DNA of 63,740 bases, the filler included, from Octopus bimaculoides (Eukaryota), in the NCBI RefSeq assembly GCF_001194135.2. It is 6 parts of 5 records of this genome, joined end to end, with 100 filler letters (N's around TTAATTAATTAA, not from the genome) between each part and the next. Parts side by side here need not be neighbours in the genome. Positions count along the whole stretch, not along the records: positions 16,016 to 39,086 come from NC_068983.1; 5 more parts are not named here. The stretch is one strand, 5' to 3'. Below the pieces are notes generated by a model that did not search any database, was not told where the DNA came from, and worked only from the letters and a program-made list of their open reading frames with translations. This document shows, in pieces, positions 10,924-39,049 of this stretch (position 1 is the stretch's first letter; each line of letters begins with the position of its first letter). The translations under genes were made by a program, and so were the position numbers.

Positions 10924-11444
10924 AGGGGCACAGCACAAGGACAACAATTTGTGTGGGGATTTACATAAAGAATGGAGAGAAAGAAATGGGAAAGACGGTG
11001 AAATGCGATAAAAGTATACATAGTATGTGATAATATGATTATTGCAGTTCTCCCGATACAGGAGAAGCTCCAACTAGAGCTAATCAAGAAAGCCTACAAA
11101 TTCAAGGTTACCTTAATTAGCAAAGGCACGAGCTCTTTCTCGTGCTCTCCAATCTACATGTACCTATCCAGAGCAGGTCCGTTCTCTTTAATAATTTCTT
11201 CCAAAGTCATCCATCTTTTCACAATTCACTGGGAGACAGTACCTTCCCCTTCATCCACACTCTCCTTTCCAAGTGGGACTTAAAAATGTCGATGCTAGGT
11301 TGAACGAAGAGGAAAGTGTCCTTCCTTAATCCTTTAAGCCTCGTCCATCACACAACCTTATTTGTCATAGACAGAGGAACACGGCGTACCCTGCCTGTTA
11401 AAGGTGGGTGGTGGAGCGATCCTAATAGTTGTTAATGAATTAAG

Positions 11445-11830
11445 CACACATCCGGCAATTTCAAGGGGAGAGGGCTAGCCCTTTAAATTGATCCCAATAC
11501 TGCGTTGGTTCTTTACTTTATCGACCCTACAGAGATGTAAGGTGAAGTTGATCTCGGTGGGATGATCAGCAAAAATACTGCCAGGCATTTTGTTCGATAC
11601 AATCGACTCTACTCATCCATCATTCTTTAATTCTATTTTAGGTACAAGGTCCGGCAATTTGGGGTGCTAACCGATTAAGTCCAGTACTTCAATAGTACTC
11701 TATTTTTCGAGCCAGGAGGTTGAAAAGCAGAGTTATGTGAGCATGATTTGAACTTACGGCGTAAAGACCTGTAAGTAACTACTGTAAGGTATTGTCCGAT
11801 GTTTTAGTGATTCTGCTAGTCCACCACCAC
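11445..11830 (-). mobile_element. Two tandem degraded SINE family A copies (about 11445-11615 and 11633-11830)
   Basis: Recognisable ttatcgac/gatttgaact/gattctgc motifs, in order, twice. Confidence 0.6.
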
Positions 11831-15915: not shown

Positions 15916-16016
15916 NNNNNNNNNNNNNNNNNNNNNNNNNNNNNNNNNNNNNNNNNNNNTTAATTAATTAANNNNNNNNNNNNNNNNNNNNNNNNNNNNN
16001 NNNNNNNNNNNNNNNC

Positions 16017-16398
16017 TATTTTTGTAAGGCAGTCTTCAAACTTGCCTACATGATTTGGAGCATCTGGAGGGCGATATGTAGCACATATAACTACATTGAG
16101 TTGTCTTATATGTACAATTAGTGTGTCACATACTGAATTTGAGTGTGACAAAAGGACCTGGGGTGTGAGGTCTTCGCAGATGTACATAGCAAACCTCACC
16201 ATGACTCCTTTCTTTTCTGTTAGTCCGTAATACAACATACTGTGGTATGTGTATTTCTGCATTTCCTATATCTGGTTTCAGGTGTGTTTCCGTAAGTGCT
16301 ATGCATAAGGCTTGATTGCAAGCAACAAGGTCTCTCAAGAAAGGGATTTTTGTCCTGTTACTAAGTGATAACAGTCCTTTGATGTTCAGTAAGAGCAT
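16017..16398 (-). mobile_element. APE-type endonuclease fragment of a CR1/L2/Jockey-group LINE
   Basis: LLNIKGL...IALTETHLKPDI..AEIHIP.Y...R..RKERSHG, then after a frameshift MYICED...CDTL...ICATYRPPD. Confidence 0.85.
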
Positions 16399-16639
16399 CG
16401 ATGTGATCTTTGTGTTGTTGCCAGTGGTGCAGCAGTGATTATATTATTTGGGTTTTCTCCTTCAGCACAGCGCCAGGCTCTCAAAAACAATGCCAATTCC
16501 ATGCTTCTCCAGGTTCTGGACATTTTTGTGTTTAATTTATTAATTTATCTATCTATCTATCTATTTATTTATTTATTATTATTTTTTAATTTTAACAGTG
16601 TGATGGAGGGTAGTGAAGAAATAGAGAAAGAAAGTGTCT

Positions 16640-17700
16640 ATATTTAGAGAGATTGAGTGGCTGAGAGAAGAGAGGAAGAGAGAGAGAGAATGTTCGTGTC
16701 TATTTGCGAGGGAGAGAGAGAGAGAGAGAAGAAAGACGTTGTGATAGAGAGAAGTGAAAAGACACAGAGAGAGGGGGGTATGTATTTATGATAAAGGTTG
16801 AGGGTCTGAGAGAAGAAAGACTGTGTTAGAGAGAAGAAATAGAGAAGAGAGAGAAAGATTGTGTCAGGAGAAAAGTAAAGAGAAAGAGAGAGTGTGTGTG
16901 TCTATGTATTTATAGTGATGAAATAGAGAGAAGAAAGAATAGTGGAAGAGAGATTAAGGGTCTGAGAGAAGAATTATGGGATGATGGAATGAAGTAAAAA
17001 GATAGAGAGAGAGTGTATCTACGTATTTAGAGAGAAACAATAGAGAAAGGGGAAAAAGACGGTATGATGGAGAAGAGAGCGAGAGAGAGAAGTTATACAA
17101 ACTCNNNNNNNNNNNNNNNNNNNNNNNNNNNNNNNNNNNNNNNNNNNNNNNNNNNNNNNNNNNNNNNNNNNNNNNNNNNNNNNNNNNNNNNNNNNNNNNN
17201 NNNNTGAGAGAGTAAGAGTGTAGAGAGTAAGAGTGAGAGAGAGGGAAAGAGAGAGAGGGAAAGAGAGAGAGGGAAAGAGAGTGAGAGTGTAAGGGTGAGA
17301 GAGTAAGAGTGTAGAGAGTAAGAGTGTAGAGAGGGGGAGTACGAGAGAAGAGAGTGAGAGAGAGTAAGAGAGAGGAGAGAAAGAGTAGGGGTGAAGAGGA
17401 GTGGGAGTGAAGAGAAGTAGGAGTGAGGTGGAGAGAAGTGGGAAGAGAAGCAGGAGTGAAGAGAAGTAGGGATGAAGAGAAGTAGGAAGAGAAGTAGGAG
17501 TGAATAGAAGTAGGAGGGAAGAGAGGTGAAGAGACATACAAAGAAGTAGGAGTCAGAGCAGGAGGGGAGGTGGGGGAGATATGGGTGGTAGGAGGGAGGG
17601 TGGAGGAGAGAGGCAGGAGGAGAGGGTTAGATGAAGAAGAGAGGAGAGGGGAGTTGAGCCCATGTGGCGCAAAGGAGTGAAGAGAGAAGATTAATCCCTG
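16640..17700. repeat. Purine-rich (GA) low-complexity tract
   Basis: Direct inspection. Confidence 0.9.
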
Positions 17701-18424
17701 NNNNNNNNNNNNNNNNNNNNNNNNNNNNNNNNNNNNNNNNNNNNNNNNNNNNNNNNNNNNNNNNNNNNNNNNNNNNNNNNNNNNNNNNNNNNNNNNNNNN
17801 NNNNNNNNNNNNNNNNNNNNNNNNNNNNNNNNNNNNNNNNNNNNNNNNNNNNNNNNNNNNNNNNNNNNNNNNNNNNNNNNNNNNNNNNNNNNNNNNNNNN
17901 NNNNNNNNNNNNNNNNNNNNNNNNNNNNNNNNNNNNNNNNNNNNNNNNNNNNNNNNNNNNNNNNNNNNNNNNNNNNNNNNNNNNNNNNNNNNNNNNNNNN
18001 NNNNNNNNNNNNNNNNNNNNNNNNNNNNNNNNNNNNNNNNNNNNNNNNNNNNNNNNNNNNNNNNNNNNNNNNNNNNNNNNNNNNNNNNNNNNNNNNNNNN
18101 NNNNNNNNNNNNNNNNNNNNNNNNNNNNNNNNNNNNNNNNNNNNNNNNNNNNNNNNNNNNNNNNNNNNNNNNNNNNNNNNNNNNNNNNNNNNNNNNNNNN
18201 NNNNNNNNNNNNNNNNNNNNNNNNNNNNNNNNNNNNNNNNNNNNNNNNNNNNNNNNNNNNNNNNNNNNNNNNNNNNNNNNNNNNNNNNNNNNNNNNNNNN
18301 NNNNNNNNNNNNNNNNNNNNNNNNNNNNNNNNNNNNNNNNNNNNNNNNNNNNNNNNNNNNNNNNNNNNNNNNNNNNNNNNNNNNNNNNNNNNNNNNNNNN
18401 NNNNNNNNNNNNNNNNNNNNNNNN

Positions 18425-19085
18425 GGAGGGGTAGGGTGGTGGGATGGTAGGTGAGGGGAAAAGGGAGGCGGGAAATGGCAGGGCGGGTTCGGGGAGAGCG
18501 AGCAGATGCACGGTCCACAGAACGTGCTCTGGCAAGGGCGGTGTGGATGGTGGTGGGTGGATATCCACGCAGGCTAAAGTGGTGAGCCATGAGTTGAGAC
18601 AGAGTCTCAAAGTCATGGCTGTCACTACAAAGTCTGCGTAGACGGAGGAATTAGGAATAGGGGATGGAAAGCTTTGTGTGTCTAGGGTGGGAGTAGGAGA
18701 AGTTGAGATAGGAGTGTGAGTCTGTGTGTTTGTAGTGGATGGAGGTGCTAAGGGCGGAGTGGAGGATGCTGACCGAAATGTCAAGAAAGGGGACAGAGGT
18801 GTCAGAGANNNNNNNNNNGGAGTGGAGGATGCTGACCGAAATGTCAAGAAAGGGGACAGAGGTGTCAGAGATAGTACAGGAGAAGTGGAGGGCAGGATGG
18901 AAAGATTGAACGAAAGAGAGGAACGAGTCAAGATGTTCACGGGAGAGTGAGGTGACAGATACAGTCGTCGATATACCGACCGTATAGTTCGGGAGGACCA
19001 GTGAAACTGGAGAATATTTGGGCCTCAACATAACCAACGAACAGGTTCGCGTAGTTGGGGCCCATTCTTGTCCCCATGGCCACTC
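18425..19085 (-). mobile_element. Penelope-like element reverse transcriptase fragment (5'-truncated, frameshifted)
   Basis: Across frames: VAMGTRMGPNYANLFVGYVEAQIFSSFTGPPELYGRYIDDCI (YIDD at 18964-18975), then SFHPALHFSCTISDTSVPFLDISV, IHYKHTDSHSYLNFSYSHP and LRGYP..TIHTALARA. These are PLE RT motifs 5-7 and the thumb. Confidence 0.9.
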
Positions 19086-19494
19086 AAGTATATACGTATT
19101 TGCATCGGGACATTTTTCGCATCGAAGATCGGTGATTGTCTTACGCTGAGGATGGGTAAATACCCAGAAACTCGAGTCTGTGCGTATCACAGATCAAGAT
19201 GGGAAGGATGACTTCCCGTTGCAAATACAGACGGGACACAGATGTGTGTCAATAGCCAGCTAGAGGAGATGTTCTCCTGGGGCTAAAAGCAACAGTAACA
19301 TCCACCCTTAGGGTTCAGCCGCATTTAAGTGGCAAATATACATCACGTTGTCGTGCAGTTACTGTTAATACCTCATTCAGAGATTTAACATTGCTTGGTT
19401 TCACTTTTTCGAGATCAGTGAATATTTTCACTGGAAAAAGTATATACGTATTTGCATCAAGACATTTTTCGCATCGAAGATCGGTGATTGTCTT
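19086..19494 (+). mobile_element. Hammerhead-containing 352-nt tandem unit (retrozyme-like / PLE pseudo-LTR)
   Basis: 19086-19142 recurs at 19438-19494 (offset 352, 2 substitutions). The second copy runs into the N gap just before the position of its ribozyme core. The unit is dense in hairpins. Confidence 0.7.
19127..19195 (+). ncRNA. Minimal type-I hammerhead ribozyme
   Basis: CTGAGGA core at 19146-19152. Stem II TGGGT/ACCCA with AAAT loop (19153-19166). GAAA at 19167-19170. Stem III AC-TCGA-GT with a palindromic loop. GUC cleavage triplet at 19176-19178. Proximal stem I TACG/TGTG, and distal stem I GATCGGTGAT (19127-19136) / ATCACAGATC (19186-19195) with 9 of 10 pairs. Confidence 0.85.
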
Positions 19495-20150
19495 NNNNNN
19501 NNNNNNNNNNNNNNNNNNNNNNNNNNNNNNNNNNNNNNNNNNNNNNNNNNNNNNNNNNNNNNNNNNNNNNNNNNNNNNNNNNNNNNNNNNNNNNNNNNNN
19601 NNNNNNNNNNNNNNNNNNNNNNNNNNNNNNNNNNNNNNNNNNNNNNNNNNNNNNNNNNNNNNNNNNNNNNNNNNNNNNNNNNNNNNNNNNNNNNNNNNNN
19701 NNNNNNNNNNNNNNNNNNNNNNNNNNNNNNNNNNNNNNNNNNNNNNNNNNNNNNNNNNNNNNNNNNNNNNNNNNNNNNNNNNNNNNNNNNNNNNNNNNNN
19801 NNNNNNNNNNNNNNNNNNNNNNNNNNNNNNNNNNNNNNNNNNNNNNNNNNNNNNNNNNNNNNNNNNNNNNNNNNNNNNNNNNNNNNNNNNNNNNNNNNNN
19901 NNNNNNNNNNNNNNNNNNNNNNNNNNNNNNNNNNNNNNNNNNNNNNNNNNNNNNNNNNNNNNNNNNNNNNNNNNNNNNNNNNNNNNNNNNNNNNNNNNNN
20001 NNNNNNNNNNNNNNNNNNNNNNNNNNNNNNNNNNNNNNNNNNNNNNNNNNNNNNNNNNNNNNNNNNNNNNNNNNNNNNNNNNNNNNNNNNNNNNNNNNNN
20101 NNNNNNNNNNNNNNNNNNNNNNNNNNNNNNNNNNNNNNNNNNNNNNNNNN

Positions 20151-20192
<42 letters not shown>

Positions 20193-26834: not shown

Positions 26835-27013
26835 AATCACGTAGTTTCGAATTCAGTCCAACTTCACGACACCTTAGGCAATGCCTTCTACCCATAGAAT
26901 AAATACCGGGTTTAAGAAAAGATAAGTACTGGGAATAATTTGTTCGACTAAATCCTTGAAGACGGTGCCCCAGCATGGCCGCAGTCAAATGACTGAAACC
27001 AGTAAAAGATAAA
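26835..27013 (+). mobile_element. SINE family B with a central deletion
   Basis: Head (ttcagtcc..cttcacgacaccttaggcaa) joined directly to the 3' part (atagaataa...ggtgccccagcatggccgcagtcaaatgactgaaac). Confidence 0.8.
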
Positions 27014-28880: not shown

Positions 28881-29754
28881 TAATCACATACATGCATGTA
28901 TACTTCAACAAGTGTCAAAGTGCATACACAAAGCAGATAACATATTTTATCGATACTTTATAAATTGCCTACCTGTCATGGTCTGACATAGAACAAAAAA
29001 AGTTAAATAAAGGCTCCTATTGTAAAAATTGCCTGGCAACGACAGGATATGCAGCTGTTATGTATGTATGTATGTATGGATGGATGGATGGATATATATA
29101 TATATATATATATACACTCACACACACAGAAATCCAATTATTCCCAAGGTATTTGGCACCAACAGGAAATAGTGAAGTGGAACTGTTTTTAAGTTGTAGG
29201 ATAACAAGATAACCTTTCTTAAGGTGTGCCCCAGTATGGCTACTGTCTCATGACTGAAACAAGTAAAAGATAAACGATCATTGATGAAGGGAATGGAATG
29301 ATGTAAAATTTCAAATTTCTTATGAGTGTAACATATTTCAGAATTTCTCTTTTTGTTTCCATTAGTGGAAATATATTTAATCTGTTTCAGAATAACCTAA
29401 TCAGCATTTTTTGCCAATTCTGGGGTAATGAAAGCTTTCCATTGCAGAAAATTAGATATGAATTTCGATGGAATGAAGGGAAACTAATTTTTTTTTTTTT
29501 AATTGATTCTTTGTAACCTTAGGAAACATTAGTACCTCTGATGGTTTGTTTAGCAATTCATGATAAGCTTGATTATCGTCATACGACTGATAAAATATAA
29601 AAGATATAAATATAAAAAATTAAAAAATGAAATCAATGTTATGAGTGTAATATATATCAAAAATCATCAGTTTTCATGTAATTGGAGATATTATTTGTTA
29701 GTAATCCCTCAGAATTTAAAGAAATTTCAAGATTTTTAAAAGCAAGTGGAAGAA

Positions 29755-30239: not shown

Positions 30240-31110
30240 TCAAGCAAAGATTCTGAAATGTCGCTCTCTATAAACAAATTGTAGTTGAATATTAGCATCA
30301 GTTATGGAAATGAAGCTTGGGAAATTTTGTACAAAAAGAGAAAGATACAGCAGATTCAGTGTGTCTTGGGTGAGAAGAAAAGTAATAGAGATAGAAGTGA
30401 GAATCAGTAGGTTTGAAGTGGATAGAGGTAGATAGGTGGACATTGTTTATGGTGATGGAGATATAGGAGAAAACTAACAGAAGTATCGGATATGTGGATG
30501 TAAATTCTAAGGCAGAGTGAAAGGCTTTAGCAAAAGAGATAACATTGATGAGCTGTTATCTGGTAAGTGTAGTCATGCCAACATAATCATCAATATAATG
30601 ACCATACAGCTTTTGGATGGGACCAGTGAAACGAGCAAAGGTTTGCTTTTCAATGTGGCCTTCAAAGAGGTTGGCATCATTGGGATTCATCCTAGGTTCC
30701 AAAGCAACAGCACTAACTTGTTTATAAAATCCTCCAGAGAAAGAAAAGCTATTAAAGATTAAGACGGTCTCAGTTAGGTGAGGAGTGTAGTTTTACTGGT
30801 TTCAGGGTTTACAAAGGGTTTAAGGGCTAGTAAGCCATTGTTATACGAGATGACAATGTACAATGGTTTGATGTCTGTGGTGAAAAGGTGTTTGGATTCT
30901 CCACACAGAAAAGAAAACAGGTCGAAAAGACATGGTTGGTGTCTTTAATGTGGATAAGACAGTGACAAGAAGTGATAATAGTTTGTCAAGGTATGACGAT
31001 AGACATAATGTGGGACAGTTACAAATGGAAATGATAGCGCAGTAGGGATTTCCAGCACATGAATTTTGGGAATAAAGTAAATAGTGAAGTTTCAAGATGT
31101 GTGTGTAACT
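30240..31110 (-). mobile_element. Decayed Penelope-like RT, related to the 18.4-19.1 kb fragment
   Basis: Across frames: PKIH..GNP, IISICNCPTLCLSSYLDKLLSLLV, RMNPNDANLFEGHIEKQTFARFTGPIQKLYGHYIDD (YIDD at 30586-30597), FHSALEF, LSTSIHFKPTDSH. Many stops and frameshifts. Confidence 0.85.
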
Positions 31111-31190: not shown

Positions 31191-32287
31191 TATATATCAA
31201 AAGGATGTGTTATAATACTATTCCACAGCCATACCAACAACCCAACATACCTCTATCATCAGCTGCCCCACAGATATCATTATGGTTTCAACAACTGGGC
31301 AGTACCATTCAATCCAGCGGTGTCAACAGCACTAAAATATGTGTTCTTTAGGAACAAACAAACCAAAGAAACCACAACTTTCAAATACATTTGCCCTGTG
31401 TACAACCATATCAATAAATAAATTCTATAAGTAAATTACACCACTCCTATATACATCACTAAACAGTGACAACTCTATTAAGTCATACAAAAATTATATT
31501 CCCTACCATCTTCTGTAGTGTAATATAAAAGTAAAAGCTTAATAACCACATATATATATCATTCAACTACAGTAGTAGTTGAATAATATTCTTAAGGCTG
31601 CAATTTACTCACACACAGCATCTTTCAGAGCTTGTCACTAAGTCAGTTCTTAACCAAATACAAAACCGTTAACATTTTTGAAAAGGACTGGTTCCTAGCT
31701 GCATTTTGGCATAAAAAATTGAGATTTAGTCCAGTAGAAAAAAGTTTACATCAAAATTTGTAGCAATGTTATAGGAGAGTAAGCAATGCCACCAATCAAG
31801 TTTAGATCTAAATAATTTTTTTTTTATTTTAAAAGCAAAATATATTTATCTTAGCTTCAGTGATAGAAGAAAGCATGAAGAATTTCATAGTTTTGATCCC
31901 ATGCAACAAAAATTTGTATCAAAAAAGTTGTGAGATAAAATATCATGAAAAAAATCTAAGTAAGGCAAAAAATTGGATTTAAGTATAATTAACTCTTTTA
32001 TTTTAAAAACAAACTATATTTTAATCAAGCTTAAATGATAGAGTTCAATTCAAGGAATTTCAAGGTATCAATCTCTTGCAATGAAATTTTAAAAGAAAAA
32101 AGTTATGAGTGATTGTTTCTTAAATTTGAGGGTGATAATATAGTTCTATACTTTTTTATGAATATAGTTCTAGGAGACCATCAGTGAGGTAAGGCAAAAA
32201 TTATCAATGACACCAATAATTGACACATTTGACACATTATTAATTAGCATAATAGCATAGCCTGGAAAAAAACATGGATTACGGGGT

Positions 32288-33340
32288 AAAATGTGAGCAA
32301 GAGAAATAATATTCTTAAGATTATAAATCTGGAAAAGTACAGGACAAGTTATTACACTTGGAAAAGTTCAGGACAATTTATTACATCTGGTAAAGTACAG
32401 AATAAGAAAATTTTTATTAAAATATTGCAGCTTAGGATAAAATTTGAATATTAAAAATTATTTGATTTTAATTTACAAAGTAACATTATAATTAAAAAAG
32501 GTACCATCATTTTGTTAAAATATTGATTTCTTTATTGCCCACAGGGGACTAAACATAGAGGGGACAAACAAAGGGATTAAGTCAATTACATCAACCCCAG
32601 TACATAACTGGTACTTATTTAATCGACCCTGAAAGGATTAAAGACAAAGTCGACCTTGGCAGAATTTGAACTTAGAACGTAACGGCAGACGAAATACTGC
32701 TAAGCATTTCGCCCGGTGTACTAACAATTCTACCAGCTCGCCACCCTACTTAAAATATTGACACACTAGAATACTTAAAAAATGAGAGCCAGAAGTACCA
32801 ATATAGTTAAAGTTTTATGCAAGGTAGAATAGTATATATGGGAGGCAAATTCATTATGTAAAAAATAGGTTTGTTCAAGACTAAAAATGTGAAGACTTAG
32901 GCAATAGCGCAAACAAATTTTACTGCGGATTTGTTGTTATAGGTAGATTTTACTGTAATATATAGCTAACTTTTTTATTATTCTATTTATTATGTACTAC
33001 TATTATTTTTTATAATCTATTTTCAAATTTCTAATTATTAATTAATAATTTTAAAAAATGAATTTTTTTAAAGTGTGAAAAATATTTTAGATTTAATTTT
33101 TTATTTTTAATAGAAGTAACAAATTATAACAAATAGAAGTAATAACTTATAATAAAATTTTTAGTTTTAATAAAAGCTAATATTTTCTAAATCCAAATAT
33201 TTTATTTGAAATTTTACCCTTAGCTGCAATATTTTTAGTAAAACTTTTCTTGTGCTGTACTTTATCAGATGTAATAACTTATCCTGAAATTTTCCAGATT
33301 TATAATCTTAAGAATATTATTTCTCTTGTCCACATTTTTT
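32288..33340. mobile_element. AT-rich foldback / long-TIR element, interrupted by a SINE
   Basis: About 32288-32470 and 33185-33340 are inverted repeats, including a perfect 39-bp match (32298-32336 vs 33290-33328). The left arm has a tandemly repeated ~28-bp unit. Confidence 0.7.
32528..32745 (-). mobile_element. SINE family A variant with a different 3' tail
   Basis: Family A head and body; tail TTTGTCCCCTCTATGTTTAGTCCCCTGTGGGCAATAAAGAAA. Confidence 0.9.
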
Positions 33341-34959
33341 CATGTAATATATATATATAAGAGTTGAATTTGACCTTATACAGAAATGTATACATAGGTA
33401 ATAAACTTTAATATATATGGATTTAGCATCAAAGCTCTTATTTAAATTTTTTGATATATAACCAAGGAGATCGATTCATAAGGAGTTTACTATAGACCTT
33501 TGTGGACGAATTTTTGATATTTTGGTAATGATTACATGTTTTATCTTACCAATACATTTGGTAGATATNNNNNNNNNNNNNNNNNNNNNNNNNNNNNNNN
33601 NNNNNNNNNNNNNNNNNNNNNNNNNNNNNNNNNNNNNNNNNNNNNNNNNNNNNNNNNNNNNNNNNNNNNNNNNNNNNNNNNNNNNNNNNNNNNNNNNNNN
33701 NNNNNNNNNNNNNNNNNNNNNNNNNNNNNNNNNNNNNNNNNNNNNNNNNNNNNNNNNNNNNNNNNNNNNNNNNNNNNNNNNNNNNNNNNNNNNNNNNNNN
33801 NNNNNNNNNNNNNNNNNNNNNNNNNNNNNNNNNNNNNNNNNNNNNNNNNNNNNNNNNNNNNNNNNNNNNNNNNNNNNNNNNNNNNNNNNNNNNNNNNNNN
33901 NNNNNNNNNNNNNNNNNNNNNNNNNNNNNNNNNNNNNNNNNNNNNNNNNNNNNNNNNNNNNNNNNNNNNNNNNNNNNNNNNNNNNNNNNNNNNNNNNNNN
34001 NNNNNNNNNNNNNNNNNNNNNNNNNNNNNNNNNNNNNNNNNNNNNNNNNNNNNNNNNNNNNNNNNNNNNNNNNNNNNNNNNNNNNNNNNNNNNNNNNNNN
34101 NNNNNNNNNNNNNNNNNNNNNNNNNNNNNNNNNNNNNNNNNNNNNNNNNNNNNNNNNNNNNNNNNNNNNNNNNNNNNNNNNNNNNNNNNNNNNNNNNNNN
34201 NNNNNNNNNNNNNNNNNNNNNNNNNNNNNNNNNNNNNNNNNNNNNNNNNNNNNNNNNNNNNNNNNNNNNNNNNNNNNNNNNNNNNNNNNNNNNNNNNNNN
34301 NNNNNNNNNNNNNNNNNNNNNNNNNNNNNNNNNNNNNNNNNNNNNNNNNNNNNNNNNNNNNNNNNNNNNNNNNNNNNNNNNNNNNNNNNNNNNNNNNNNN
34401 NNNNNNNNNNNNNNNNNNNNNNNNNNNNNNNNNNNNNNNNNNNNNNNNNNNNNNNNNNNNNNNNNNNNNNNNNNNNNNNNNNNNNNNNNNNNNNNNNNNN
34501 NNNNNNNNNNNNNNNNNNNNNNNNNNNNNNNNNNNNNNNNACTACCTCCAAAAAAAATTTTGTATATTCAGAATCTACATGACATAACACATTCGTAAAC
34601 AATTTCATTAAAAATTATCCATTTTTCTGAAAGTTATGATCATCCAAAGTCGGGGTGGGGTAGAAATCTGTAGTTTTGCCTTTGAATCAAACACAAGGAG
34701 ATTTCAGTTCAAGTAAATTTTTTTCATCAATTTCTTCAAAAAGATTTCAGTATAAACTTTCGGAAAATATGTTCAAAAAGAAACAAAAAATGTTCAGTGA
34801 ATCTTTTCAGCTGCAAAAGGCTTTGTATCAATGATGGAAGTTTTTTCTTACCTTTTTGCTGAACTCACAAACTGACTGGTGGGAATAAAATGACCTGTTA
34901 ATTTTCATCTCTATTCATATGTATACATGTGTGTGAGTATGTGTGTGTTACCAGTACCA

Positions 34960-35639: not shown

Positions 35640-38600
35640 TCACACATGTGGTAGTAGAAAGCATGTCACAAGGTAATTAAGTGTTCAAGTCAACACAGAG
35701 TAGTGTGAGACATACAGAGGTAACAACAATAAAAAAAAAACCTAATTTTTTCTCTTCCAAAATACATAAGCGAGTTTGACTCAGATGATAGGCTATAGAA
35801 ATGGTGACATCTACAATTTCATTACCAATTATAGATTGGTCAAATGAGAATAAATGTGAAGCTTACAATGAATGGATCAACTTTATGAATTTCTGCTTCT
35901 TTATTAAGAGAATAGAAGAAAAACTTAAACACAATAATATCTTGTTTAGCACAGGACCAAAGGGTCCTGTGCAAAGGGTTAATGAAAGATGCCAACATTA
36001 CAACTGAATAGAAAGAATCTTTGAGAAATGTATTTAAAATTTTGATGTCCATTTGATACAGAAGCCAAACAAATGGGTTAAATGGTTAGAATTTTCATCA
36101 GTGCAATAAAATGAAAACTCAGTCAATGAATATTTAAATGAAAGATGTAACTTTGCCATAAACAAGGATGAAAGAATCCTTGAACAAACAATAAAAGGAT
36201 TAAAGTGGGCAAATGTAAAAAGAAGCATCATAAACAATACCTCCACCTTTGCTAAGGCAGAGGTAATAAACCAAATCTTATGTCAGAGGTAGCTATTAAA
36301 AGCATAAGGACATGTTTTGAAGTATCAATGGAAAATACTAATCAATGTGGAAGATGTGGGAAAGCTCACAGAAAAAGAAAAGACTGTTATGCATTTAACA
36401 GAGAATGCAGAAAATGCCATAGATACCATTTTGAAAAATGTTACCATACAAAAGCAACTATATACCAAAATAGTCCACACAGAACAAAGCCCATACAGAA
36501 CCAGAAACTTACCTCATGTGGAACCAGAAAACAAAGCCTGTACAGGTATAGTAAACAAAATATAGATAAGACAAATGTGGATGCCACTTACAAGTCATAA
36601 TATGATTCAGACCAGGAGGAAGAAAATGTATCTATACACTGTAGAAAATAAAGAAGACAAAAGTCTCAATATCAGTGAGCGCAGGGAAATATTTGCTATC
36701 ATAGATTGTAAAAATTCCTATGAAAGTAAATACAAAATAAAAATGAAAATACACACTGGAGCCAATGGAAATATACTACCACCCAGGCTATACAAGCAGA
36801 TGTACCCCCAAAAGATTTGTAAAGCTGCTGGAAAGCCAACAAGTCTCGGAAGATACCACAATATGGTTCAGTAGCCCTTAGCCTTAGACACAAAAATTCC
36901 AACACTATACAAGCCAAATTTTTCGTGTGCAACAATGTTAGGCCTAAGACCTTGTAAAACGTTGGGCCTGGTGCGAATCAACTGTAGTATAACATCAGAT
37001 ACAAGAAAACAACTGCAAAGCATAGAAGACATCAAAAGTGAATACCCTGACATATTTAAATGTATGGAAATTTTCCAGGGAAACAAAAAGTACACATTGT
37101 TGAAAATGCAGCACCAGTGGTACAACCTCCAAAAAAGTATCCAATATACTTGAAAGATTAATTAAAGAAAGAATTGGATAAAATGGAAGACATTGGCGTG
37201 ATCACAAAAGTAAATGAATCAGCAGACCGGATGAATGCAATTTCATGTAGCAGGAAGAAAAATGGTGGGTTATTTATATGTTTAGAGCTAAAACCATTGA
37301 ATAAATGCATTAAAAGAACTTAACCACAAAACCCCAACCCTTGAGAAAATTTCCCGCAAACCAGCAAGTGCTAAATATTTCACAAAATTAGATGCAAAAC
37401 ATGGGTACTGGGCAATACATCTTGATAGGAATCAAGTCTGCTTACATGTTTCCATATACCATTTGGAAAATACAGATAGTTATGGTGTCCATTTGGGTCC
37501 AAGGTGTCTCAGAACATTTTTCAGTGAAAAATGGACCAAATACAGGAGCCATTGGTATATCTGATGAAATTTGCATATATGGCAAAACAATTGAAGAACA
37601 TAATAAGAACTTGAGGACAATAGATAGAGCCAGAAGATATGGTAAGTGCAAAGTGAGACAAAACAGATAAAATTTTATGGTCTTATGTGGAATGAAAATG
37701 GCTCTCACTGAGATCCAGATAAATGTGATTCAATCAAAACAAAACCTACACCTACAAACCTTGAGGAACTTCAGAAATTTCAAGATACAATCCAGTATCT
37801 AAACTCCTTCATACCAGAACTCAGTTCTAGAACAGCTCTACTGTGTTAACTACTCAAGAAAGATACTGAATGGCAATTGAATGACACATGAAAAAGCTTT
37901 TCAAAAATTGAAAGACTGTGTTTATGAAAACATTTGCCTTACTTATTTCAGGCCTAATGCAAAGACAGTGATCCAGATAGATTCTAGCATGTTAAGGCCT
38001 AGATGCAACACTGATCAATGATGGAAAAATTGTTGCATTTGCTAGTAAAAGTCTGACTGATGCTAAGTCAAGATATACAAATACAGAAAGAGAGCTACTT
38101 GCAGTCATGAAAAATTTCACACGTATGTGTACAAAGAAGAGCTTCAAATTTAATCCAACCACAGATCATTGGAAAACATACAGAACAAAAACATTGCACC
38201 TCAAGGGAGCAAAGAATGCTGTTAAGGCTACAACTGGTATGATGCTCAAATCATATAAAAACCAGGTAAAGAAATGAGAGTTCCAGACTATTTATCAAGA
38301 ATACAGCCAACAAGGGAAAGAAATTAAATTAGATCTTACCATACATGCTGTTGATATATCAGTACAGAACCAAATAAGCTACAGAAGAAGACAAAGAACT
38401 GAAAATTCTAAAACAAATAATAACTGGATGGCCAGGGGCTGTGAAAGACATACCAAAAAGTATAAGAAACTGCTAGCCATTGAAAGACTACTTATCAGGT
38501 GAGTGCATAGTCATTCGAAAAAACACGCAAAACACAGTTTTTCAGAGAATCCATGACGCACATCATGGAATTGAAAAGTGTCAGCTCAACGCAAGGAATA

Positions 38601-38880
38601 GTTTTTATTGGAGAGACATAAACAAAGTCATCAAAAGAACTAGAACAATCATGTGAAATATGCAATGGGCATCAGAGAAGAAATACCAAAGAAACAATGA
38701 TGATAGAAGAACACTCAACAAGACCATTCCAAAATATTGCAGCTGACACTTTTTACTTCAATGGTCAACAATTCTTACTTCTTGCCAATCAATACAGCAA
38801 ACTGTCTTTTGTCAAGACTATGAGGAACATCAATAACTGAAGCTACATTGAAAAATTGATTTCAGTAAGTTTGTCTTAGA
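35640..38880 (+). mobile_element. Dead Ty3/Gypsy (Mag-like) LTR retrotransposon internal region
   Basis: Gag with CGRCGKAH...C and C..C..H knuckles. Protease KIHTGA (catalytic D changed to H). RT motifs FTKLDAKHGYW and GISDEICIYG. RNase H motif IVAFASKSLT. Integrase zinc finger (H...HGIEKC...C..C) and start of the core domain. Heavily frameshifted. No paired LTRs identified. Confidence 0.9.
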
Positions 38881-39049
38881 GTGGGATAAAAATTTAGGCT
38901 TCTACTAAGCAGAGCTCATTCAGCATTTCAGTAGGTCTCTGAGAATGGTGTAAAGCAGCATGGAAGAAGTGGGATGATGGCAGATGAGCAGGCAAATTCT
39001 CTTGGTTGTTTGTGTGACTAAAATGTCCAAAAGTTTGCTGCTGTGGTGC

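What the first reader, a model, noticed from the sequence alone, without database searches (positions are those of the whole stretch)
19086..19494. Retrozyme-like system: a 352-nt structured, hammerhead-bearing unit in tandem, predicted to release a small circular RNA
Seen: the 57 nt just upstream of the hammerhead (19086-19142) recur 352 nt later (19438-19494) with 2 substitutions. The second copy enters the N gap about 3 nt before where its CUGAGGA core should start. The intervening unit is packed with hairpins: GGGAAG/CTTCCC 19201-19217, GACACA/TGTGTC 19235-19250, AGGAGA/TCTCCT 19264-19278, CAGTGAA/TTCACTG 19416-19433, plus a multibranch domain. Established: non-LTR retrozymes and PLE pseudo-LTRs are tandem monomers of a few hundred nt delimited by minimal type-I hammerheads; cleavage at consecutive ribozymes frees a monomer that can circularise. 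Inference: cleavage after 19178 and at about 19530 (in the gap) would give a 352-nt monomer, reconstructable as 19179-19437 + 19086-19178. I do not know of such a unit being characterised in cephalopods, but could not search.
Basis: partly seen in the sequence, partly recalled or inferred. Interest (0 to 1): 0.9.

Follow-up and report, generated by a model that had tools for sequence, protein, structure and literature searches.

The report
Hammerhead-ribozyme tandem repeat beside a Penelope element
A 352-base repeat carrying a self-cutting hammerhead RNA motif sits head-to-head against a broken Penelope-like retrotransposon; it looks like an ordinary animal "retrozyme", a kind already described in mussels, corals and salamanders, and is not a new kind of system.

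Summary
A 57-nt direct repeat (55/57, period 352) lies inside one gap-free contig. All four hairpins are present. A complete type-I hammerhead core sits at 19146-19178, with GUC cleavage after 19178. A structural descriptor finds it once in the piece and in 1 of 3000 simulated pieces. Rfam's Hammerhead_1 model gives only 11.6 bits (cut-off 34), though every modelled pair and core base is satisfied. The reconstructed 352-nt circle has 43% GC and folds far better than shuffles (z -7.4).

This head-to-head layout is typical of Penelope-like insertions.

The ribozyme is the canonical metazoan type: 4-bp helix II, UAAAUA loop, and 2-bp helix III inside the 8-nt palindrome ACUCGAGU. It is not the minimal Penelope type. 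Size, GC and self-pairing match published metazoan non-LTR retrozymes (mussel units are 350-390 bp).

Unproven: the second ribozyme (inside the 656-N gap), genome-wide copy number, transcription and circles. No other copy was found anywhere, and the organism could not be identified.

Verdict: probable new member of a known kind, of modest interest. The junction with the Penelope-like element is the most interesting detail.

The parts
19086..19437 (+). First visible 352-nt repeat unit. It is cut at its 5' side by the junction with the Penelope-like element, has 43% GC and no ORF with database relatives.
19438..19494 (+). First 57 nt of the next unit (55/57 identical). It ends at the contig end.
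19146..19178 (+). Type-I hammerhead core: CUGAGGA, helix II UGGG/CCCA with loop UAAAUA, GAAA, short helix III, GUC. Predicted cleavage is between 19178 and 19179.
19170..19177 (+). ACUCGAGU, a perfect 8-nt palindrome that contains helix III and loop 3. It allows two ribozymes to form a joint 8-bp helix III, the dimeric hammerhead.
   Evidence: principle from PMC4209133
19096..19145 (+). 5' strand of helix I and of its long extension. It pairs with 19179-19228.
19179..19228 (+). 3' strand of helix I and of its long extension. The ribozyme therefore sits at the tip of a hairpin of about 45 bp.
19495..20150 (.). Assembly gap of 656 N, predicted to hold the second hammerhead (cleavage near 19530) and the 3' end of the array. 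The span 19086-20150 is 1065 nt, or 3.03 units, if the gap size is right.
   Evidence: arithmetic; gap sizes are estimates
18425..19085 (-). Penelope-like element reverse transcriptase, from the YIDD motif to the ...TYHP region. It is 5'-truncated exactly at 19085 and dead: a frameshift near 18945 and an in-frame stop in IPYS*FLRLRR. It continues into the gap 17701-18424.
18809..18818 (.). 10-N gap inside the reverse transcriptase, flanked by identical 53-mers (18756-18808 and 18819-18871). This is an unmerged contig overlap, not biology.
   Evidence: (D16)
20151..20189 (.). (TA)n microsatellite directly after the gap, the likely flank or target of the insertion.

Best explanation
The segment from 19086 into the gap is a short tandem array, probably about three units, of a 352-nt non-autonomous, hammerhead-bearing retroelement of the metazoan non-LTR retrozyme kind. 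It is joined head-to-head to a dead, 5'-truncated Penelope-like element (PLE) on the other strand.

Shown here: the repeat, a complete hammerhead core with all helices, the extreme self-complementarity of the unit, and the sharp junction with the PLE.

Inferred from the published life cycle of such elements:
1. The array is transcribed as an oligomer.
2. Helix III is only 2 bp under a palindromic loop, so two neighbouring ribozymes pair through ACUCGAGU into a double hammerhead.
3. Each ribozyme cuts after its GUC (19178, and about 19530 in the gap).
4. [quoted passage not shown]
5. A PLE reverse transcriptase/GIY-YIG endonuclease copies this RNA into new tandem cDNA insertions.
For: Repeat: 55/57 identity, period 352, within one contig. 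Hammerhead: a structural descriptor gives 1 hit in the piece against 1 in 3000 simulated pieces. It is the only hit on either strand even with a relaxed descriptor. Rfam's Hammerhead_1 is the only family aligned to it. The alignment shows every core base conserved, no non-standard pair, and the same 4-bp helix II plus 6-nt (C/U)AAAUA loop as the family consensus. The 8-nt palindrome gives dimer capacity. The circular monomer folds at -118.7 kcal/mol against -81.7 +/- 5.0 for shuffles (z -7.4, 0 of 200 shuffles as good), with 65% of bases paired. The minus strand gives z -5.6. GC is 43%. The longest stop-free stretch in a trimer is 81 codons, with no relatives in 5.8 billion or 1.8 billion proteins. 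The PLE identity of the neighbour rests on 1089 homologues. One is a 70%-identical relative whose reverse transcriptase is followed by a GIY-YIG domain (PF01541, above cut-off). That relative shows the same head-to-head inverted arrangement (494-nt arms, 100% complementary). It carries a different, minimal hammerhead 96 nt after its ORF. Literature: metazoan retrozymes are tandem units of 150-450 bp, low in GC, highly self-paired and carry canonical type-I hammerheads; mussel units are 350-390 bp; PLEs are the candidate mobilisers (PMC7229834; bioRxiv 10.64898/2026.07.22.740005).
Against: Only 1.16 units are seen, and the second ribozyme is hypothetical. There is no other copy in the 23-kb piece, in JGI metagenomes, GTDB genomes or IMG/VR. 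However, none of these collections is expected to hold this animal genome. Rfam's score is 11.6 bits against a cut-off of 34, with no hit at gathering threshold. The 10.1-11.1 pair is U-A rather than the highly conserved G-C. The active fold of the 69-nt ribozyme domain is predicted at -9.6 kcal/mol against -21.8 for a competing fold in which CUGAG pairs with CUCGAG. There are no expression data. The assembly is short-read and full of gaps (six gaps in 23 kb), so the junction could be a mis-join between two repeat families.
Confidence: 0.6

Rival explanations
1. The plus-strand segment is not a separate element. It is the PLE family's own terminal region (pseudo-LTR or 3' UTR): the inverted twin arm of the minus-strand copy, with an internal or partial tandem duplication. 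The hammerhead would then be a PLE hammerhead that processes PLE transcripts, and no 352-nt circle is made.
For: An inverted 5'-truncated copy next to a pseudo-LTR that carries a hammerhead is the textbook PLE layout (PMC8557442, fig. 2). I saw it in the relative L003. The true 3' end of the window's PLE is hidden in the gap 17701-18424, so identity with the unit cannot be excluded. The 2026 preprint finds retrozymes and pseudo-LTRs to be homologous, so the line between the two is thin.
Against: A 352-nt period does not fit a PLE tandem, whose period is about 3 kb. The ribozyme is the canonical type (helix II 4 bp, helix III present). It is not the minimal PLE type seen in the relative L003 (unpaired base after A9, no loop 3). 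The unit shares no similarity with the L003/L004 3' regions or with 17600-17700, where the minus-strand copy should end. In L003 the element ends about 95 nt after its hammerhead. Here the sequence runs on for 259 nt and then restarts.
Confidence: 0.2
2. A dead relic: an old, partly duplicated fragment of a hammerhead-bearing repeat. It is not a full array, its ribozyme no longer works, and it is neither transcribed nor circularised.
For: The neighbouring PLE is dead, with a frameshift and a stop. The 10.1-11.1 pair is non-consensus, the Rfam score is sub-threshold and a competing inactive fold is predicted. The two differences in copy 2 (GG to AA) break two G-C pairs of the long stem if the partner strand is unchanged, a cost of 9 kcal/mol.
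Against: All invariant core bases and all helices are intact, which is unlikely after long neutral decay. Folding stability is extreme (z -7.4). The copies are 96.5% identical. A contig that breaks inside the second copy is what a longer tandem array does to a short-read assembler.
Confidence: 0.13
3. Artefact or chance: the repeat or the PLE/unit junction is an assembly error, and the hammerhead-like motif is a coincidence in a structured satellite.
For: The assembly demonstrably contains an overlap artefact 280 nt away (D16) and six gaps. The sequence-only pattern occurs by chance in 15% of shuffles.
Against: Both repeat copies lie in one N-free contig and differ at two positions, so they are not an unmerged overlap. 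The sequence before copy 2 does not match the sequence before copy 1, so it is not an allelic duplication of the junction. The structural descriptor gives 1 in 3000 by chance, before counting that it sits beside a PLE and inside a tandem repeat.
Confidence: 0.05

Closest known systems
Metazoan non-LTR retrozymes (Cervera & de la Pena 2020, PMC7229834), especially the Mytilus galloprovincialis units of 350-390 bp
   Same: A tandem unit of a few hundred nt (352) with one type-I hammerhead per unit, GC below 45%, no ORF, LTR, PBS or PPT, a highly self-paired monomer, and co-occurrence with PLEs.
   Different: Helix III is as short as in the amphibian retrozymes, which need dimers. Most invertebrate retrozyme ribozymes are reported to cleave efficiently alone. 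The 10.1-11.1 pair is U-A. Copy number, transcription and circles are unknown here. The array is directly fused to an inverted PLE fragment.
Newt/salamander satellite 2 and axolotl retrozymes, and the Schistosoma Sm-alpha hammerhead (the Rfam RF00163 consensus)
   Same: A monomer of about 330-350 nt, helix III of 1-2 bp capped by a palindromic loop so that the ribozyme works as a double hammerhead, and helix II of 4 bp with a (C/U)AAAUA loop, as in the Rfam consensus GUCC-CAAAUA-GGAC.
   Different: All four helix II pairs differ in sequence. There is no detectable sequence homology outside the core. Rfam's score is far below threshold.
Minimal hammerheads in the pseudo-LTRs of Penelope-like elements (Cervera & de la Pena 2014, PMC4209133)
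   Same: Physical association with a PLE, type-I topology, and palindromic 15.2-16.2 positions.
   Different: PLE minimal hammerheads have a 6-8 bp helix II, an unpaired base after A9 and little or no helix III. They lie in the same orientation about 100 nt after the PLE ORF, as in L003. The window's motif has none of these traits and lies on the opposite strand to the PLE.

Membership tests
Hammerhead ribozyme, type I (Rfam RF00163) | Score at or above Rfam's gathering threshold (34 bits) | tested here: not met
   No hit at gathering threshold. 11.6 bits, E 3.4, when only 76 nt were searched.
Hammerhead ribozyme, type I (structural definition) | Invariant core C3 U4 G5 A6 N7 G8 A9 ... G12 A13 A14, an A15.1-U16.1 pair, H17 at the cleavage site, three helices, and helix I open (type I) | tested here: met
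   All core bases are present, with GUC at the cleavage site. Helix II is 4 bp (5-6 bp if the U-A and A-U in the loop also pair), helix III is 2 bp, and helix I is 4 bp plus an internal loop plus 10 bp. The chance rate of the descriptor is 1 in 3000 pieces.
Hammerhead ribozyme, type I (structural definition) | Conserved G10.1-C11.1 pair | tested here: not met
   The pair is U-A (19153/19166). PMC4209133 calls G10.1-C11.1 highly conserved. The effect on activity was not tested.
Hammerhead ribozyme | Self-cleavage at the predicted site | not testable with these tools
   This needs in vitro transcription of monomeric and dimeric constructs.
Metazoan non-LTR retrozyme | Head-to-tail tandem repeats of 150-450 bp, each with a type-I hammerhead | tested here: inconclusive
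   The period of 352 is confirmed, but only 1.16 units and one ribozyme are visible. The rest is in a 656-N gap.
Metazoan non-LTR retrozyme | Low GC (below 45-50%) and no LTR, PBS, PPT or coding capacity | tested here: met
   GC is 0.43. The longest open stretch is 81 codons, without homologues. There are no terminal repeats other than the tandem repeat itself.
Metazoan non-LTR retrozyme | Monomer RNA is highly self-paired | tested here: met
   The circular fold gives z -7.4 and 65% paired bases. The ribozyme sits at the tip of a stem of about 45 bp.
Metazoan non-LTR retrozyme | Many dispersed genomic copies, with target-site duplications | not testable with these tools
   The source genome is not in any searchable collection. 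Both outer ends of the insertion lie in gaps.
Metazoan non-LTR retrozyme | Expression as linear and circular RNA of unit length | not testable with these tools
   No transcriptome data are available.
Metazoan non-LTR retrozyme | Co-existence with autonomous Penelope-like elements | tested here: met
   There are two PLE reverse transcriptase fragments in the piece, 18425-19085 (-) and about 30337-31085 (-). Both look dead, and no intact PLE is seen.
Penelope-like element pseudo-LTR with minimal hammerhead | Hammerhead in the terminal repeat of a PLE, in the same orientation as the ORF, minimal architecture (long helix II, no helix III), repeat period equal to element length | tested here: not met
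   The motif is on the opposite strand to the PLE, has canonical architecture and a period of 352 nt. The related PLE in L003 shows the expected minimal form.

The most novel reading that the evidence does not exclude
The sharp head-to-head junction at 19085/19086 is the scar of one integration event. In that event the Penelope-like machinery primed cDNA synthesis on both strands of its target. It copied a PLE mRNA for the left arm and a multimeric or circular retrozyme RNA for the right arm, and the two 5'-truncated cDNAs were joined in the middle. Such chimeric insertions would be direct structural evidence that PLEs mobilise animal retrozymes. Until now that link has been inferred only from co-occurrence and pseudo-LTR homology.
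Probability: 0.2. Interest if true: 0.6.

Novelty: new member of a known kind. Interest (0 to 1): 0.3.

Why it matters
If confirmed, it adds one more lineage to the animals that carry hammerhead retrozymes. It would be an invertebrate example with the amphibian-style, dimer-dependent helix III. That extends a known catalogue and is not a discovery. The potentially useful part is the junction. If genome-wide analysis showed recurrent PLE|retrozyme head-to-head chimeras, the open question of which enzyme mobilises animal retrozymes would become testable from sequence alone.

Tried and rejected
- Rfam at gathering threshold over the whole piece gave nothing. Rfam at E up to 10 over 18840-19494 gave only two chance matches, SNORD75 and TCL6.
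- I looked for further copies of the unit in five ways, all empty: BLASTN within the piece; exact-pattern scans of JGI metagenomes, GTDB genomes and IMG/VR; and two protein searches using the unit's longest stop-free translations as bait for ORF-called copies. These collections are mostly microbial. The negatives say little about copy number in the source animal.
- Loci around four PLE homologues (L001-L004) come from other organisms and do not contain the unit. They were useful only for PLE architecture.
- I tried to identify the organism by exact look-up of three window ORFs and by a search with an endonuclease-like LINE fragment. All were empty, so 'cephalopod' remains unverified.
- Pfam on my spliced 198-aa reverse transcriptase fragment returned nothing. 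The PLE assignment therefore rests on homologues and on the GIY-YIG domain of the relative in L003.
- I considered that the array had inserted into a PLE. This is rejected because no PLE sequence follows the gap.
- I considered that the PLE had inserted into an array. This is rejected, as far as visible sequence shows, because no unit sequence lies left of the PLE.
- I considered an allelic mis-join. This is rejected because the sequences upstream of the two copies differ.
- An energy evaluation of the double hammerhead was not possible, because the structure is not nested in a two-strand representation.

Full report
**What is in the sequence**

The 57-nt stretch 19086-19142 recurs at 19438-19494 with 55 of 57 identical bases and a spacing of 352 nt (family D15, E 1.9e-22). 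The two differences are adjacent: GG at 19107-19108 against AA. Both copies lie in one stretch free of N. The second copy stops at the edge of a 656-N gap (19495-20150), three bases before its CUGAGGA box would begin.

This differs from a real assembly artefact 280 nt to the left. There, two identical 53-mers flank a 10-N gap (18756-18808 and 18819-18871, D16), which is an unmerged contig overlap. The sequence upstream of copy 2 (...CACTGGAAA) does not resemble the sequence upstream of copy 1 (...CATGGCCACTC). The repeat is therefore not an allelic duplicate of one junction. It is what the start of the next unit of a tandem array looks like. Three of them appear in the predicted fold.

**The ribozyme**

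Positions 19146-19178 read:
- CUGAGGA
- UGGG-UAAAUA-CCCA (helix II and loop 2)
- GAAA
- C-UCGA-G (helix III and loop 3)
- UC

Every invariant hammerhead base is present. The 15.1-16.1 pair is A-U, the cleavage triplet is GUC, and cleavage would fall between 19178 and 19179.

Helix I has three parts: four proximal pairs (19142-19145 with 19179-19182), an asymmetric internal loop, and a 10-bp distal stem (19127-19136 with 19186-19195). It continues as a nearly unbroken stem of about 45 bp between 19096-19139 and 19182-19228.

The statistics depend on how much structure is required. The plain sequence pattern is weak evidence, since 15 of 100 shuffles of the window contain one. A descriptor that also demands the three helices hits once in the real piece and in 1 of 3000 simulated pieces of the same size and dinucleotide make-up. 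With a relaxed descriptor that would also catch minimal hammerheads, this remains the only hit on either strand.

Rfam does not call it. There is nothing at gathering threshold. Hammerhead_1 scores 11.6 bits against a cut-off of 34 when only 76 nt are searched. Even so, that alignment is informative. All core positions match and no modelled pair is non-standard. Helix II plus loop 2 has the same 4-bp plus 6-nt layout as the consensus: GUCC-CAAAUA-GGAC against UGGG-UAAAUA-CCCA. All four pairs are changed on both sides, and the AAAUA loop is kept.

There are two cautions:
- The 10.1-11.1 pair is U-A. PMC4209133 describes G-C there as highly conserved.
- The nearest-neighbour fold of the 69-nt domain prefers an inactive pairing of CUGAG with CUCGAG, at -21.8 against -9.6 kcal/mol for the active secondary structure.

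Helix III is only two pairs under a UCGA loop, and ACUCGAGU (19170-19177) is a perfect 8-nt palindrome. This is the architecture that PMC4209133 describes for canonical metazoan type-I hammerheads. Such ribozymes are poor as single motifs and active when two copies form a joint helix III.

**The unit as an RNA**

The monomer that two cleavages would release (19179-19437 plus 19086-19178) is 352 nt with 43% GC. Folded as a circle it gives -118.7 kcal/mol against -81.7 +/- 5.0 for 200 dinucleotide shuffles (z -7.4, no shuffle as good), with 65% of bases paired. The complementary strand also folds unusually well (z -5.6).

It has no coding capacity of note. The longest stop-free stretch in a trimer is 81 codons. 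Neither that translation nor a 64-codon one has any relative in the protein collections.

The minus strand from 19085 down to 18425 encodes the C-terminal half of a reverse transcriptase...AMGTRMGPNYANLFVGYVE...YIDD...FLDI...HYKHTDSHSYL...IPYS*FLRLRRLCSD...RGYP...TYHP. It has more than a thousand homologues. One is an ENA contig (L002) with 76% nucleotide identity, whose alignment stops exactly at window position 19085 while the L002 gene continues upstream.

A relative with 70% amino-acid identity (L003) has the reverse transcriptase followed by a GIY-YIG nuclease domain above Pfam's cut-off. That domain order is the defining architecture of endonuclease-positive Penelope-like elements (PLEs).

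The window copy is therefore a PLE that is 5'-truncated at 19085. It is also dead, with a frameshift near 18945 and an in-frame stop. Its 3' part disappears into the gap 17701-18424.

No PLE sequence follows the 19495-20150 gap, and no unit sequence lies left of the PLE. Neither element is simply inserted into the other.

The layout is an inverted 5'-truncated PLE copy abutting a hammerhead-bearing repeat on the other strand. This is the complex insertion structure described for PLEs (PMC8557442, fig. 2). I found the same geometry in L003, with 494-nt arms that are 100% complementary and meet head-to-head. L003 also has a minimal hammerhead (CUGACGA-A-GGGC...GCUC-GAAACGUC) 96 nt after the ORF stop on each arm.

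**Retrozyme or the PLE's own terminus?**

Three observations favour a separate, non-autonomous element:
- The period is 352 nt, not the roughly 3 kb of a PLE tandem.
- The ribozyme is of the canonical type: 4-bp helix II, helix III present, and no unpaired base after A9. Both PLE hammerheads of the relative are of the minimal type. This split between canonical hammerheads in retrozymes and minimal ones in PLEs is the one drawn in PMC7229834.
- The unit shares no similarity with the 3' regions of the related PLEs, or with 17600-17700 where the window's PLE should end.

The window PLE's true 3' UTR is hidden in a gap, so the rival cannot be excluded. I give it about 0.2. A 2026 preprint (10.64898/2026.07.22.740005) argues that animal retrozymes derive from PLE pseudo-LTRs, so the two readings are biologically close.

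**Comparison with what is known**

PMC7229834 defines metazoan non-LTR retrozymes by these features:
- tandem units of 150-450 bp, each with a type-I hammerhead
- low GC
- no LTR, PBS or PPT
- transcription into highly self-paired circular RNAs of about 170-400 nt, closed most likely by a tRNA ligase
- co-existence with PLEs, which are proposed as the mobilisers

In the mussel the units are 350-390 bp, and the circles reach up to about 1% of total RNA. The paper reports such repeats 'from molluscs to arthropods'.

The window's unit meets every feature I could test: size, GC, lack of coding, self-pairing, hammerhead type and a PLE neighbour. It is untested on copy number, second ribozyme, expression and circularity. 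Its short helix III resembles the amphibian elements, which need dimers, more than the efficient invertebrate ones.

I found no paper that mentions hammerhead retrozymes in cephalopods. However, I could not confirm that the window is cephalopod.

**Mechanism**

Shown: the repeat, the motif, the fold and the junction.

Inferred from the published life cycle:
1. An oligomeric transcript forms double hammerheads through the ACUCGAGU palindrome.
2. It cuts after each GUC.
3. The 352-nt monomer is ligated into a circle.
4. A PLE enzyme copies the circle, or the oligomer, into tandem cDNA at a new site.

If the gap size is right, the span 19086-20150 is 1065 nt, or 3.03 units. A (TA)n tract follows at once. 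This fits a three-unit insertion next to a microsatellite, but gap sizes are estimates.

**Most novel reading not excluded**

The head-to-head junction may be the product of one integration in which the two arms were templated by different RNAs: a PLE mRNA and a retrozyme RNA. That would be direct evidence for mobilisation by PLEs. One locus in a fragmented short-read assembly cannot carry that claim. Shared target preference, or a mis-join between two repeat families, would explain it as well.

**Verdict**

This is most likely a new member of a known kind, with confidence about 0.6.

Noticed in passing
window 18756-18871: Identical 53-mers flank a 10-N gap inside the PLE reverse transcriptase. 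This is an unmerged contig overlap. With it the peptide ...SDTSVPFLDISVSILHS is read twice, so one copy should be removed before translation.
   Followed up: yes
window about 30337-31085 (-): A second, more diverged Penelope-like reverse transcriptase fragment (44-52% aa identity to the relatives over about 145 aa, plus N-terminal pieces). No hammerhead was found near it.
   Followed up: partly
window 36280-39000 (+): A decayed LTR-retrotransposon gag-pol with many stops. It has a CCHC-like knuckle in the 106-aa ORF at 36280-36600 (no Pfam hit) and an integrase zinc-binding domain (PF17921, E 4e-10) at about 38426-38660.
   Followed up: partly
window 16016-16400 (-): An endonuclease-like stretch (...CIALTETHLKPD...) that looks like the N-terminus of a LINE AP-endonuclease, cut by the piece's edge. 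It has no Pfam hit and no homologue in the protein collection, so the call rests on my reading only.
   Followed up: partly
window 16600-17700: A long purine-rich (GA/GAAGAGAAGTAGGAGT-like) minisatellite left of the PLE. The related PLE in L003 also ends next to a 10-bp minisatellite (L003 11770-12370). This is consistent with the reported PLE bias for simple repeats.
   Followed up: no
L003 9406-9899 / 11160-11653 and L003 11559 (+), 9500 (-); L004 11559: The related PLE in an unidentified ENA assembly shows 100% identical inverted arms, which suggests a recent insertion. It has a minimal hammerhead CUGACGA-A-GGGCUAACGCUC-GAAACGUC 96 nt after the GIY-YIG ORF.
   Followed up: partly
window 32278-32376 / 33250-33348: A 99-nt inverted repeat, 85% complementary, with arms 873 nt apart. 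It could be the terminal inverted repeats of a small DNA transposon.
   Followed up: no
window 26965-27013 / 29226-29274: A 49-nt direct repeat (86%), GTGCCCCAGCATGGCCGCAGTC...ACTGAAAC..GTAAAAGATAAA, at two sites 2.3 kb apart. It is probably a dispersed short interspersed repeat.
   Followed up: no
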